Of a DNA stretch of 64,000 bases, positions 15,258 to 51,477 are shown one piece after another. Made by a program: the position numbers and the translations under genes. The notes beneath the pieces were generated by a model, which did not search any database, was not told the origin of the DNA, and saw only the letters and a list, made by a program, of their open reading frames with translations. The DNA comes from Diadema antillarum (taxonomy: Eukaryota). The stretch is taken from NCBI RefSeq assembly GCF_040938485.1, contig NW_027271056.1:2666001-2730000 (forward strand). Reading direction: 5' to 3'. Numbering within the stretch: the stretch's first letter is position 1; each line of letters begins with the position of its first letter.

Positions 15258-18200
15258 TCAGTAGTTAGATGCTGGGACTTCCTTGATGATGATCCTTGAG
15301 GCGCTGTTCCATCCCGTGTAGGCGTCGTAGTCCCCGTACCCGGAGCAGTCCCCGACCATGAACTTCACGTCCACGCTGCCTGCAGCCACGTTGTGACAGT
15401 AGCCTATCATTTGACATGGGTGAAAAAATATGCAAATAATGGTCTCCCGTAGTCCTATCGACTGATTTGAGCAAATTTGAAATATCAATAGTTTCATATT
15501 TTCTTTCAAAAGTAAATCTTTACAACATAAGTCTTTTTTATAAGATGATATCAAAAGTAATTCGCCTGTGTGGACGTAAAGACCTAGTTTTCTTGGACTG
15601 TCCAACGTCAAAGCCCACTGGCATACCAACACACGCGCGAGCTTTCAGTCCATTTCACGTCCGTTAGCTACGCTTTGTTCCTTTAAGCCAAGTACACTTT
15701 TCATTAAACGTTCGATCGATGTCTTCTTTACATGTTTTAAATGTTCATGCGTAATCGTGTTCATTGGTTTTGAATATTTTGTAAAGCATATCTTGGTTGT
15801 GATAACTGTTACTCTTCATGTCTTTTAATCTTTTCGTAGGGGACCCAATATGTGTTCAGTGTAATTGTTATTGTCTGTATGTTTGAAAAGTATCCTTTTA
15901 GGTTCTTACCTACTGTGAAGACAAAAATTTTCGCGAATTTCAAGAGAAGCCAAGATTCGCAAAAACTTGAAATGCATGCGAAATTTCTGGTCTACATTAT
16001 GTATTGAATGCCAGTAGTAATTCGTAAAAACTTCATTCAGCGAAAGAGACCGTCCGCTTCAATCCGCAAAAATGTCATGCCAGAGATATTTCTGGGTTTG
16101 TAGTACGTAGTGAACTTTTTCTGTTGTGAATTTTACTGCTGGCACTGAGCTGCACAAGCTTGAATTGTTAAAACAGCTTTAAACCAACCCAAATCTACCT
16201 CCAAGTCGACACAAATAGGACATTAATAACTTACCTTGAATACTCCTGTGCCGGTGAAGATTCATGTAGTAAGTGTTTTCCTGGTAGACTACGCCGTCAA
16301 TGGGAGTGGGAGAACATTCGTCGTCGTTGAAGGTAAAGTACCATCGCTTGCAGCAACCGGTACAGCCGTAGAGACGGATGTTTCCTCCGTAGTAGACCCA
16401 TAAAGCCGAACTGCTTTCTTTCTTATTAAACGTACACGTCTGAAGAAAGAAAAAACAAAACAACCAACAAAACAAACAAGGAAATGCAGTTATTCTAGTA
16501 GAGCCATTGGTTAGGTTACCTGACCGGCAGAGCCTCTTTCTCACTGATGAGAGTGAAGAACAATTAAAAAAAAAAAAACATCATGGAAGCAGACAAAATC
16601 GCATGAATAATCAAGTTCAAGTTCAAGTTCAAATTTATTTTCATTTCCATCAAATAAACAGAGAAAATTATATACAATGTATAAGCAGAACATATTTGTA
16701 ATATTTGCAATAACGCGAATTAGCAAAATACATGTGATAATGAGTAACAAAATGAAGAAACATAATTGTTTTCAAATTACGGCGCAATATCTTTTTTGTT
16801 CTCAAAATGACGTTAGGTATCTTTAAAACCTTAAATAATTCCAATGTATGGATTGGACAACGATGAACATTAGTAACATTACTGGTGTACCAAGAAACTT
16901 ACGTAGATTGTATCGTAGTCGTTCCCATTGGCAGAATACCAGGCACACTGTTTCCAGTTGTTATACTCGAGGAGTTCCCCCGGGCCCGCATCTCCGGTAG
17001 CACCCTGTGGCCCTGGGGGTCCGGGAGGTCCCACCGGTCCTTGAGCGCAAGACTAAAACAAACAATTGCATTAACTATCTCTGGACCACCGAAATCTACG
17101 GGCCGTGTCACACCTTTCCGGGCAAGCCTTGCGTGCGCCTTGCGAAGAACAATTTTTACTACCCGGAGCCGGAGGTCCCCCAGATGACCCGCACATGACA
17201 GTACCTAGCACGTATCTCACCCTTGGTCGCCCGGAGGTGCGCACGTAAATCTTTTCACCCGCATCTATGTTTAGGCCCTGTCACACCTTTCCGGGCAAGT
17301 TACGAGGGCTTGTTGAGTGTAGAGATTTTCCAGCATACCGGAAATTCCTGAGGGCGGACAAGGATTTGAGCGAGTCAGTGCACGTGTCTTACAAGCTGGA
17401 CGCTCTCTAATTAAGTTCTACTTGCGGTTATTCTGTGTGACCTGCGTGCCAGGCGCGTGGGGCTGATAACTCAGTGAAAGAATTCCTCTGAAGGAATGGC
17501 AGAAGTCCCACAGAATGTCATTATCTTGGCTGCATACGGGGACTGCGAAGAACTGTGTGGGAGTTGTCTTCGAGGTGCTGCCGCTAAGGGCCTCCTACTG
17601 GCGTTCTGCGTGGACCTCTGCGGGCAAAAGTTTTGGTCATGCTCAAAACTTGGCTGCGGGTAAATCGGACTTGCGTGCGCACCTCCTGGCAACTATGGCA
17701 AGATAGGTACTGCCAGGTGCGGACCAACTGCGGAGAGCTCCGGGTAGTAAATTTTTTTTTCCCCTTAAGTCAACCCGCAAAACTCCCCCAGATACGGTAT
17801 GAAAAGGCCTTGAGCATGCTCAAAACTTGTTCCGAATGAGTCGCGGGGGTTCGCCCGCAGAGATACACGCAGAACACTAGTAGGAGACCCTTACCGGCAG
17901 CACCTTGCGGGCAACTCCAACGCAGGTACTTCTCGGTACCCGTAAGTCGCTCGTAACAGAAAACGGATCGGTTTCAAAGCTCTCACGCAGGTCACACGGA
18001 ATACACGCAAGTAGAAGGTAAGTAGCACGAGTCTAGCAGGTAAGACACAAGTGCAAAACTCGCAAACATTCTTGTCCGCCCGCAGAAAATTCTCCTGCGT
18101 GCTGGAAAATCCCTACTCGCAACAAGCCCGCGTAGCTTGCCCGGAAAGGTGTGACACGGCCTTAAGACTTAGCATCAAAATGTTAATGATAAGAATGAAA

Positions 18201-50400: not shown

Positions 50401-51477
50401 TTAAAAATATTTTGAATCAATAACATTATGTTATGTATGATTGTATATGACTTTGTTGGAAAATGAGAGCTTTATGAATTGAAATTTAGGTCTTCAACCG
50501 AAATAGAACCAGTCATAGAGATGGCACATAGTCTTGTAACTGCGTTATGTTGAACATTATACGAAATCTTGTTCATGGCTGTAGACATCAGAGAAGACTC
50601 AAAGAGAAGATTTGTCATGACTTATCTAACGGTAAAATCTGGCGGAAAAGTGAGTTGCACAGTTCACGATACAAGGAGAAAGAAATACAACTTGTACTTC
50701 CAAACACGCGCCCTTAATATACCTGATTGTGCGCGAAGTTTCACATAATATCATGATGCGTTGGTTTTACTTTAGAGAAGTATTGCCTTTGAGATAACTC
50801 TACCTTTAAGTATAACAGTCGAATAGACGGATTTGGTTCAAAGGCTTGATTTCTATAGCATTATCAAGATTTGAGATTTTCAGAAAAATAAATATTTTCA
50901 CTATAGAAACATGTTTCTATGTCGTAGACAGTGTAAACTTTTTCATGTTGCCGTTGACATTATGTTGCTAACATCTTGGGTTCCTGGCATGCAAAGCAAC
51001 CATTGAGAAAAAATAAAAACCTTGTCCAATTTATAAGCAGACATAACTCATCAGTGCCACATGCTTCTATCAAAAGCATTGTCAACACTGGTTGCATGTA
51101 TTATGTAACTGTGTGCCTGCTATGGACTCGATGTTGTAAAGTGACTAGTTTTGACACCGTTTACGAGACACTTTCTAAATAAAATAAAAAGTTACCATCT
51201 TTTCTCACGCACGTCAGAGTTTCCTCTTTTTTAAACAAACACCATAGTAAACTATTCAGGACAACGAAACTGCACAACGTTGTCTGATTTCAGCTGAGAG
51301 GAATGTAAACGTATGAAAATAAGCGGGCAAAGAATGGTTTACTGTGCGAGAGAGACAGGTAACTTACTGTATTGAAAATCATAACTTTATGGAATGACTT
51401 ACTTGTTGAATTGATCCGCCAATGAACACGCTGACAACGAGAAGGACGAACAGGCAGTTGGGTTTAGTCACGGCCAT
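47406..51477 (-). CDS. CTHRC1: CTHRC1-like protein, copy F (195 aa; paralogue of E)
   Basis: Exons 51477-51403 ([25 protein letters not shown]), 50194-50039 ([18 protein letters not shown]...DNGAVY), 49136-48929, 47554-47406 (GICDGLAAG...ELPASPYS*). GT-AG introns, phases 0/0/1. Confidence 0.92.

What the first reader, a model, noticed from the sequence alone, without database searches (positions are those of the whole stretch)
15258..51477. Tandem array of six intact CTHRC1-like genes in two subfamilies
Seen: six head-to-tail 4-exon genes with identical intron phases, signal peptides and all eight domain cysteines, and no stops. A/B/C are near-identical proteins, D is divergent, and E/F form a distinct pair. 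Established: mammals have one CTHRC1, a secreted trimeric modulator of Wnt/PCP and TGF-beta signalling in tissue repair, and lineage-specific duplicates are known in invertebrates. Inference: a locally expanded and diversified family of secreted trimeric ligands, possibly for wound repair, regeneration or ECM control, maintained by purifying selection.
Basis: partly seen in the sequence, partly recalled or inferred. Interest (0 to 1): 0.8.

Follow-up and report, generated by a model that had tools for sequence, protein, structure and literature searches.

The report
Sea-urchin CTHRC1-like six-gene tandem array
The window holds six intact, head-to-tail copies of a CTHRC1-like secreted protein gene in the sea urchin Diadema antillarum. 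The genes are real and under strong selection, but they are already named in public annotation and belong to an old array shared with other sea urchins, so the finding is ordinary.

Summary
Six 4-exon genes lie head to tail on the minus strand (15258-51477). All have GT-AG introns in phases 0, 0, 1, no internal stops and eight invariant domain cysteines. Exons 3 and 4 each pass Pfam's CTHRC1_C cut-off.

No N gap cuts an exon. Two gaps lie in introns (A intron 1, D intron 2) and one between genes. The other haplotype (contig C833) and Diadema setosum are collinear across them.

The genome is Diadema antillarum. [quoted passage not shown] RefSeq A and B differ only in a first exon that lacks a signal peptide.

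The array is not a local novelty:
- Lytechinus and Strongylocentrotus carry the same layout, two E/F-type genes and then at least three (Lytechinus) or two (Strongylocentrotus, where the fetched stretch ends) A-D-type genes.
- E/F-type genes occur in a sea star and a sea cucumber.
- Leclère et al. 2020 reported six Cthrc1 genes in S. purpuratus and echinoderm-specific diversification.

Purifying selection is strong (dN/dS 0-0.07). Function in repair or regeneration is untested, and no RNA run was listed.

The scan's first readers noted CTHRC1-like arrays on three other pieces of this genome. These are probably the other haplotype and a second four-gene locus.

The parts
15258..20141 (-). Gene A, 187 aa. 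Exons 20141-20079 (signal peptide), 17052-16903 (Cys plus 7 Gly-X-Y plus start of the C-terminal domain), 16439-16235, 15403-15258 (stop at 15258-15260). Intron 1 holds the N gap.
   Evidence: Searches give the model and splice sites. One search gives Pfam CTHRC1_C on exons 3 and 4; exons 2-4 are the same as RefSeq P0008; exon 1 is 63/63 nt identical in D. setosum, and its donor is kept.
21840..25211 (-). Gene B, 187 aa. Exons 25211-25149, 23894-23745, 22598-22394, 21985-21840.
   Evidence: exons 2-4 are the same as RefSeq P0009; orthologue in D. setosum with dN/dS 0.014.
27019..30696 (-). Gene C, 193 aa. Exons 30696-30616, 30246-30097, 28070-27866, 27164-27019.
   Evidence: identical to RefSeq XP_071490012.1 (P0001); no amino-acid change against D. 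setosum at dS 0.27.
33540..38075 (-). Gene D, 198 aa, the divergent member. Exons 38075-37986, 37144-36995, 35228-35024, 33691-33540. Intron 2 holds an N gap.
   Evidence: identical to XP_071490014.1 / XP_071507034.1 (P0003). Pfam on exons 3 and 4; the orthologue in D. setosum is degraded.
41845..45002 (-). Gene E, 195 aa, second subfamily. Exons 45002-44928, 44113-43958, 43555-43348, 41993-41845.
   Evidence: identical to XP_071490015.1 (P0020). The D. setosum orthologue P0022 differs at 7 residues.
47406..51477 (-). Gene F, 195 aa, second subfamily. Exons 51477-51403, 50194-50039, 49136-48929, 47554-47406.
   Evidence: identical to XP_071490016.1 (P0012); the D. setosum orthologue P0021 differs at 6 residues; the allele on the other haplotype lacks window 48547-49029.
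19054..19190 (.). Assembly gap inside intron 1 of gene A.
   Evidence: anchors at window 17950 and 20331 are 2381 bases apart here and 2378 apart on haplotig C833; the D. setosum alignment is collinear on both sides. Letters were not looked up.
36034..36239 (.). Assembly gap inside intron 2 of gene D.
   Evidence: haplotig locus L013 aligns to both flanks in the same order and strand, with 222 bases between them. Letters were not read.
39826..39961 (.). Assembly gap in the spacer between genes D and E.
   Evidence: the flanking anchors are 5122 bases apart here and 5261 apart on C833, which leaves no room for a hidden gene copy.

Best explanation
This is the CTHRC1-like gene cluster of the sea urchin Diadema antillarum. 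Six functional paralogues of the metazoan Cthrc1 family are arranged head to tail.

Each gene encodes a small secreted protein made of four parts:
- a signal peptide;
- one cysteine;
- a very short collagen stretch of 6-7 Gly-X-Y triplets;
- the CTHRC1 C-terminal domain with eight conserved cysteines, which folds as a TNF/C1q-like jelly roll.

The jelly-roll domain probably nucleates a trimer whose three short collagen stretches wind together (inferred).

The cluster is old. Its layout, two E/F-type genes followed by several A-D-type genes, is shared with camarodont sea urchins. The E/F type goes back to the common ancestor of sea urchins, sea stars and sea cucumbers.

Within Diadema there has been slow birth-and-death turnover and local gene conversion:
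- A, B and C form a Diadema clade.
- Exon 4 of A, B and C has been homogenised.
- D is lost in D. setosum.
- One F allele is broken.

By analogy with vertebrate CTHRC1, the products are extracellular modulators of matrix deposition or of Wnt/PCP- and TGF-beta-type signalling. That last step is inference only.
For: Shown here:
- Gene structure.
- Pfam CTHRC1_C on single exons at 47-73 bits against a cut-off of 27.
- Models C, D, F and E are identical to P0001, P0003, P0012 and P0020.
- Paralogue dS is 0.19-0.92 with dN/dS 0.02-0.07, and introns cannot be aligned between paralogues.
- Orthologue dS is 0.19-0.39 with dN 0-0.003 against D. setosum, while non-coding identity there is only 79-84%.
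- The same array is present on the second haplotype at 94-99.4% identity through the introns.
- The same layout is present in L. variegatus, S. purpuratus and D. setosum.
- The tree has three clades. The E/F clade includes sea star and sea cucumber sequences (92/92) and the A-D clade has 93/98 support.
- Eight cysteines are invariant.
- The AlphaFold model is an all-beta domain with mean pLDDT 72.6.
- Foldseek matches it to TNF/C1q-like trimers (Pgp3 C-terminal domain, BC2L-C lectin, FasL, 4-1BBL, BclA) at E 1e-5 to 1e-3.
- The homotrimer model scores 0.94 against a best control of 0.00. Runs agree in at least 95% of contacts and partner pLDDT is at least 89. The calibration counts were 21 of 30 solved pairs and 0 of 23 single chains, made with two copies rather than three. 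Residues 29-51, the collagen stretch, touch in all three copies.

From the literature: Leclère et al. 2020 (PMC7058181) report S. purpuratus with 6 Cthrc1 genes, an echinoderm-specific diversification at 100% bootstrap, tandem duplicates in cnidarians, and a modelled C1q-like C-terminal domain.
Against: - No expression data. No RNA run was listed, so the transcription and splicing of each copy rest on sequence conservation and on RefSeq's predicted models.
- RefSeq gives A and B first exons without a signal peptide. If those are right, A and B would not be secreted.
- The collagen stretch is below Pfam's Collagen cut-off (16.4 bits against 27.2 for A, no hit for E).
- The trimer is a model only, and a pass may reflect resemblance to solved C1q/TNF trimers.
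- One-to-one orthology of A-D with the camarodont copies is unresolved in the tree. The shared layout could therefore reflect parallel turnover within an old cluster.
- Nothing here bears on Wnt, TGF-beta or repair.
Confidence: 0.85

Rival explanations
1. Assembly artefact. Some of the six copies are haplotypes, or collapsed or duplicated contigs stitched in tandem across the N gaps, so the true copy number is lower.
For: The assembly does hold both haplotypes. It totals 1.75 Gb, and each CTHRC1 locus is present twice: C168/C833 and C33/C1335. Two gene models, A and D, span gaps.
Against: - True haplotypes here align at 94-99.4% through introns and spacers. The paralogues align only in their exons and have dS 0.19-0.92.
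- The independent haplotig C833 has the same six genes in the same order, and the anchors flanking the gaps sit at matching distances.
- D. setosum has one-to-one orthologues of A, B, C, E and F in the same order on a gap-free stretch.
Confidence: 0.02
2. A recent, Diadema-specific local expansion. An ancestral single gene or pair was amplified in this lineage for a new need such as spine or wound repair.
For: - A, B and C form a Diadema-only clade (93/85), and E plus F form another (97/98).
- Diadema has four A-D-type genes, against three intact ones in the fetched stretch of L. variegatus.
Against: - Both subfamilies, their order and their orientation are shared with Lytechinus and Strongylocentrotus.
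- Synonymous divergence among A, B and C is 0.5-0.9 and introns cannot be aligned.
- All the duplications predate the split of D. antillarum and D. setosum.
- Gene conversion, shown for exon 4, can produce species-specific clustering without any recent duplication.
Confidence: 0.1
3. Partly redundant cluster in decay. Only some copies matter, and D and F are on their way to loss.
For: - The D orthologue in D. setosum lacks exons 1-2, has frameshifts in exon 4 and has changes at otherwise invariant residues. It is not annotated there.
- The C833 allele of F lacks 484 bases, including the last 101 bases of exon 3 and its donor, and reads into a stop. No RefSeq protein exists for it.
Against: - In D. 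antillarum, exons 3-4 of D encode the same residues on both haplotypes, and one protein sequence (P0003) is on record under two accessions on two contigs.
- F has an intact orthologue in D. setosum with only 6 amino-acid differences.
- E/F dN/dS is 0.067.
- The F deletion could be an assembly error in C833.
Confidence: 0.2

Closest known systems
[quoted passage not shown]
   Same: It has a signal peptide, a short collagen repeat and the CTHRC1 C-terminal domain (PF25815) with the conserved cysteines. From my own knowledge of the human gene, it also has four coding exons and is secreted as a trimer.
   Different: Vertebrates have a single, slowly evolving gene with 12 Gly-X-Y triplets. Here there are six genes in tandem, plus four elsewhere, with only 6-7 triplets. 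Nothing is known of their partners or signalling role in echinoderms.
Cthrc1 paralogues of Strongylocentrotus purpuratus and other echinoderms (Leclère et al. 2020, PMC7058181, table S3: S. purpuratus 6, Apostichopus japonicus 3)
   Same: It is the same family and the same phylum-specific diversification. The S. purpuratus cluster fetched here (L033) has the same order of E/F-type and A-D-type genes.
   Different: I saw no description of the urchin clusters as tandem arrays, or of their subfamilies, in the sections of that paper I read or in a term search of it. D. antillarum has 10 genes per haplotype (6 + 4) against 6 reported for S. purpuratus.
Tandem Cthrc1 clusters of cnidarians (Nematostella, Clytia, Acropora; Leclère et al. 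2020, fig. 2C)
   Same: Closely related paralogues lie side by side on one scaffold, and the length of the collagen repeat varies.
   Different: These are independent expansions in another phylum. Collagen repeat numbers there range from 4 to 54.
C1q/TNF superfamily, including collagen-tailed members (C1q chains, collagens VIII and X, Bacillus BclA)
   Same: The fold is a jelly-roll trimer attached to a collagen stalk. Foldseek matches include BclA, FasL, 4-1BBL and the TNF-like lectins.
   Different: There is no sequence-level match to any solved structure. TM-scores are only 0.4-0.6. The cysteine pattern is specific to CTHRC1. This is a likeness of fold, not membership.

Membership tests
Cthrc1 family (Pfam PF25815 CTHRC1_C plus a collagen triple helix repeat) | CTHRC1 C-terminal domain above Pfam's curated cut-off. 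| tested here: met
   exon 3 alone scores 68-73 bits and exon 4 alone 47-57 bits against a cut-off of 27, for A, D and E. B, C and F are 92-98% identical to A or E; all six exon-3 and exon-4 places in the window region pass the cut-off.
Cthrc1 family | A short Gly-X-Y collagen repeat N-terminal to the domain. | tested here: met
   Read directly from the translations: 7 triplets in A-D and 6 in E/F, preceded by one Cys. The Pfam Collagen model is below its cut-off (16.4 bits against 27.2 for A, none for E). This is expected for so few repeats, and Leclère et al. accept as few as 4.
Cthrc1 family | N-terminal signal peptide (secreted protein). | tested here: inconclusive
   All six first exons have a hydrophobic core. 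The model of C has an N-terminal helix at residues 5-24. The first exons of A, B and C are conserved in D. setosum with their donors kept. RefSeq models of A and B use other first exons without one, and no signal-peptide predictor or RNA data were available.
Cthrc1 family | Conserved cysteine framework of the C-terminal domain. | tested here: met
   C63, C79, C103, C106, C107, C119, C148 and C165 (numbering of P0001) are invariant in Diadema C, D and F, Lytechinus, Strongylocentrotus, sea cucumber, sea star and coral sequences. A, B and E have them as well. E/F carry three extra cysteines.
Cthrc1 family | Conserved intron at the 5' end of the part coding for the C-terminal domain (Leclère et al. 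2020). | tested here: inconclusive
   All six genes, and the Lytechinus, Strongylocentrotus and D. setosum copies, share the same exon boundaries: full-length exon matches of 50/68/47 or 52/69/48 residues. I did not compare the position with a vertebrate or cnidarian gene structure.
Cthrc1 family | Trimeric assembly. | tested here: met
   Met in a model only. The homotrimer of P0001 residues 28-193 scores 0.94 against a best control of 0.00 (with the calibration caveats given there). The fold matches trimeric TNF/C1q-like proteins. No experiment was done.
Cthrc1 family | Function: modulation of Wnt/PCP and TGF-beta signalling and of collagen deposition, with induction on injury. | not testable with these tools
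   No RNA run was listed, and no paper on echinoderm Cthrc1 function was found.

The most novel reading that the evidence does not exclude
The near-identical neighbours A, B and C (perhaps with D) are not redundant. They would be chains of mixed trimers, as the tandem C1QA-C1QC-C1QB genes are for C1q. On this reading, the exon-4-restricted homogenisation keeps the C-terminal strands of the trimer interface compatible between chains, while exons 2-3 diverge only at silent sites. The E/F pair would form a second, older trimer type that is conserved across echinoderms.
Probability: 0.1. Interest if true: 0.5.

Novelty: already known. Interest (0 to 1): 0.15.

Why it matters
It matters little beyond bookkeeping. 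The family, its habit of tandem duplication and its echinoderm-specific diversification are published. These very genes already carry the CTHRC1-like name in RefSeq.

The check adds some modest points:
- The urchin cluster has a conserved two-subfamily layout, shared by diadematoid and camarodont urchins.
- The E/F type is found across echinoderm classes.
- RefSeq's first exons for A and B probably miss a conserved signal-peptide exon.
- The cluster shows live turnover: D is lost in D. setosum, one F allele is broken, and exon 4 undergoes gene conversion.

D. antillarum is a keystone reef grazer that has suffered mass die-offs. A tidy catalogue of its matrix and repair genes may therefore be useful to people studying spine or wound repair. 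That use is not a discovery in itself.

Tried and rejected
- Expression. The look-up of sequencing runs (rna) on gene D listed no run. Splicing across the gap-bearing introns could not be tested with reads.
- Solved structures by sequence. No relevant PDB hit (the best was E 0.085, to an unrelated hydrolase).
- Papers on Cthrc1 function in echinoderms. Nothing relevant.
- Seventh copy in the window. None. The 'GVCD' motif at 56915 was chance.
- Flanking genes that might link to CTHRC1 biology, such as a Frizzled. None was seen among the long open frames at 1-15000 and 51500-64000. Only the already noted coiled-coil/NHL remnant is there.
- ORFs inside intron 2 of C (28801-29565). They looked like a retroelement by eye but gave no Pfam hit.
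- The large all-against-all protein search was not used, because Pfam and the word search settled the family.
- Joined models. Searches were made exon by exon, by reference. The joined models were built only inside scripts from window coordinates, for translation, identity and dN/dS. Public proteins identical to models C, D, F and E stood in for them in alignment, fold and complex jobs.
- Letters under the N gaps were not looked up. Only distances between flanking anchors were compared.
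Full report
**What is there.** All the coding pieces lie on the minus strand. Translating the open frames gave three conserved coding pieces per gene. Scanning upstream for ATG-started hydrophobic peptides ending at a phase-0 GT donor gave the first exons of B to F. Similarity to the first exon of B gave that of A.

The six models are 187-198 residues long. Each has four exons, GT..AG at every intron, phases 0, 0, 1, and no internal stop. Each protein has these parts in order:
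- a hydrophobic leader;
- one cysteine;
- 6-7 Gly-X-Y triplets;
- a roughly 135-residue C-terminal domain.

A tblastn of all exon peptides against the whole window returns exactly these 24 exons and nothing else.

**The gaps, tested first.** The window has N runs at 19054-19190, 36034-36239 and 39826-39961. They fall in intron 1 of A, in intron 2 of D and in the D-E spacer, so no exon or reading frame depends on a gap.

Whether the two sides belong together was tested without reading any letters under the gaps.
- Haplotig C833 aligns collinearly to the window at 94-99.4% identity.
- For the gap in D, one C833 stretch (L013) matches both flanks in the same order and strand, with 222 bases between them.
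- For the gap in A, anchors at window 17950 and 20331 are 2381 bases apart here and 2378 apart on C833.
- For the intergenic gap, the anchors are 5122 and 5261 bases apart.
- In Diadema setosum, the alignment is collinear on both sides of the A gap, and the first exon of A lies upstream of exon 2 on a stretch without N.

No extra gene copy can hide in any of the gaps. Read-level proof by spliced RNA was not possible, because no run was listed.

**What family.** Single exons translated by reference pass Pfam's CTHRC1_C (PF25815) cut-off of 27 bits. Exon 3 scores 68-73 bits and exon 4 scores 47-57 bits. The collagen stretch is too short for Pfam's Collagen cut-off, but it can be read directly.

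A word search was made with the open frame around exon 3 of A, scoring the exon alone. [quoted passage not shown] The same search for E did likewise.

Comparison with RefSeq:
- My models C, D, F and E are letter-for-letter the RefSeq proteins XP_071490012, XP_071490014, XP_071490016 and XP_071490015.
- A and B match XP_071490010 and XP_071490011 in exons 2-4 but not in the first exon.
- RefSeq gives A only 'MM' and gives B a 19-residue non-hydrophobic start.

My first exons have classic hydrophobic cores and are conserved in D. setosum. For A, 0 of 63 bases differ although non-coding identity between the species is 79-84%. The donors are kept as well. I therefore think the RefSeq first exons of A and B are mis-predictions, but only RNA can settle this.

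**Are the copies real paralogues?** Yes.
- Mature-protein identity is 92-98% within A, B and C, 81% between D and A-C, 97% between E and F, and 54-56% between the groups.
- At the DNA level, paralogues align only in their exons, and even B and C share no alignable intron.
- Synonymous divergence is 0.51-0.92 among A, B and C, saturated against D, and 0.19 for E/F, with dN/dS 0.02-0.07.
- True haplotypes in this assembly look quite different, at 94-99.4% identity through introns and spacers.

The whole-genome scan with PF25815 shows that the assembly (1.75 Gb, 2963 contigs) carries each locus twice. This array is on C168 and again on C833, with the same six genes in the same order. A second, four-gene array is on C33 and again on C1335, with 88-98% non-coding identity between those two. 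Per haplotype there are therefore at least ten genes in three subfamilies.

**How old is it?**
- In D. setosum the same order is found, and A, B, C, E and F each have a one-to-one orthologue. For A, B and C dS is 0.19-0.39 and dN 0-0.003, and E and F differ by 6-7 residues.
- In Lytechinus variegatus (CM031017.1, 32.53-32.58 Mb), two E/F-type genes are followed on the same strand by three intact A-D-type genes and one degenerate copy.
- In Strongylocentrotus purpuratus, the fetched stretch shows two E/F-type genes and then A-D-type genes.
- E/F-type proteins at 67-83% identity over exon 3 occur in the sea star Patiria miniata and the sea cucumber Apostichopus japonicus.

A maximum-likelihood tree (23 rows, coral outgroup) gives three clades:
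- the second-array type (100/97);
- the E/F type, including sea star and sea cucumber (92/92);
- the A-D type (93/98).

Inside these clades, A, B and C form a Diadema clade (93/85) and E plus F another (97/98). The place of D among the camarodont copies is unresolved.

So the cluster and its two subfamilies are ancient. Within-species clustering reflects either turnover inside the cluster or concerted evolution.

Concerted evolution is directly visible in exon 4. A, B and C differ there by 3-7 bases, no more than orthologues differ between the two Diadema species (4-6). In exons 2 and 3, paralogues differ by 10-39 bases and orthologues by 3-13. Fisher tests of exon 3 against exon 4 give p = 2e-5 to 5e-4. 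This agrees with another first-stage note on the same stretch.

**How it probably works.**
- An AlphaFold model of protein C, built from a nine-sequence alignment, is an N-terminal helix (the leader), a disordered collagen stretch and an all-beta domain. Mean pLDDT is 72.6, and many blocks of the domain reach 85-94.
- Foldseek against the PDB returns trimeric TNF/C1q-like jelly rolls at E 1e-5 to 1e-3 and TM 0.4-0.6. These are Chlamydia Pgp3 C-terminal domain, BC2L-C lectin, FasL, 4-1BBL, the TNF-like lectin PLTL and the collagen-tailed BclA.
- No solved structure matches by sequence.
- A three-copy model of residues 28-193 scored 0.94 against 0.00 for the best control. Runs agreed in at least 95% of contacts, and partner pLDDT was at least 89. 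The mark was reached by 21 of 30 solved pairs and 0 of 23 single chains in a calibration made with two copies. The collagen stretch touches in all three copies.

This supports a secreted trimer but does not show one. It matches the C1q-like model of Leclère et al. 2020. The vertebrate roles (Wnt/PCP co-factor, brake on TGF-beta and collagen deposition, induction on injury) are established knowledge for vertebrate CTHRC1 only. Nothing here tests them in an urchin.

**Comparison with what is known.** Leclère et al. 2020 (PMC7058181) report the following:
- most non-vertebrates have several Cthrc1 paralogues;
- clade-specific diversification occurred in echinoderms (100% bootstrap);
- tandem duplicates exist in cnidarians;
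- S. purpuratus has six genes and A. japonicus three.

The present array is thus a member of a described pattern, and its genes are already named in RefSeq.

**Verdict.** Novelty is 'already known' and interest is low.

The small new points are the conserved two-subfamily layout in urchins, the probable mis-annotation of the first exons of A and B, the exon-4 conversion, the loss of D in D. setosum and a broken F allele on the other haplotype.

Noticed in passing
window 48547-49029 (gene F, end of exon 3 plus part of intron 3) against L035 = G000:C833:198900-205500: The other haplotype lacks these 484 bases. Its F allele keeps the first 107 bases of exon 3, then runs into intron sequence and a stop. 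RefSeq has no protein for it. This is either a null allele in the sequenced animal or an assembly error in C833.
   Followed up: partly
L034 (D. setosum OZ188199.1) 6368-7903, homologous to window 33357-36415: The orthologue of gene D in D. setosum is a pseudogene. There is no match to exons 1-2, exon 4 has frameshifts, and exon 3 has changes at residues that are otherwise invariant (F81, Y111, D125, R142 of P0001). It is not annotated there.
   Followed up: yes
window exon 4 of A, B and C: 15258-15403, 21840-21985, 27019-27164: Homogenisation is restricted to exon 4. Paralogues differ by 3-7 bases, no more than orthologues between the two Diadema species. Exons 2-3 differ by 10-39 bases. The similarity stops at the exon borders.
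   Followed up: yes
window 20079-20141 and 25149-25211: These are conserved signal-peptide first exons of A and B that RefSeq's models (XP_071490010, XP_071490011) do not use. The RefSeq products lack a leader, as do the D. setosum models of the same two genes.
   Followed up: partly
G000:C33:479445-504414 and G000:C1335:8545-48381: A second locus holds four CTHRC1-like genes of a third subfamily, with the same intron positions around exons 3 and 4. It is present as two haplotype contigs that differ by large insertions.
   Followed up: partly
L036 = G000:C833:169600-177700, against window 23140-23685: Intron 2 of gene B is about 4.8 kb longer on the other haplotype (inserted sequence, not identified). 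The coding exons of that allele are intact, with one amino-acid change.
   Followed up: partly
L032 (L. variegatus CM031017.1) 6359-7955: A partial, uncalled A-D-type copy (short exon-2 and exon-4 matches, full exon 3) lies between intact genes of the Lytechinus cluster. It is probably a pseudogene.
   Followed up: no
whole assembly G000: The assembly (1.75 Gb, 2963 contigs) carries both haplotypes of both CTHRC1 loci as separate contigs. Gene counts from this assembly will be roughly doubled unless they are purged.
   Followed up: partly
window 6690-9835, minus strand: Two long open frames are present. One is coiled-coil-like, and one has weak NHL / beta-propeller-type Pfam hits below cut-off. 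This is the remnant noted by another first-stage entry and was not studied here.
   Followed up: no
window 28801-29565, minus strand (intron 2 of gene C): Two adjacent open frames of 113 and 118 residues look like the tail of a retroelement protein but give no Pfam hit. (TA)n-type microsatellites recur near 19300-19400, 21700, 45550 and 49400.
   Followed up: partly
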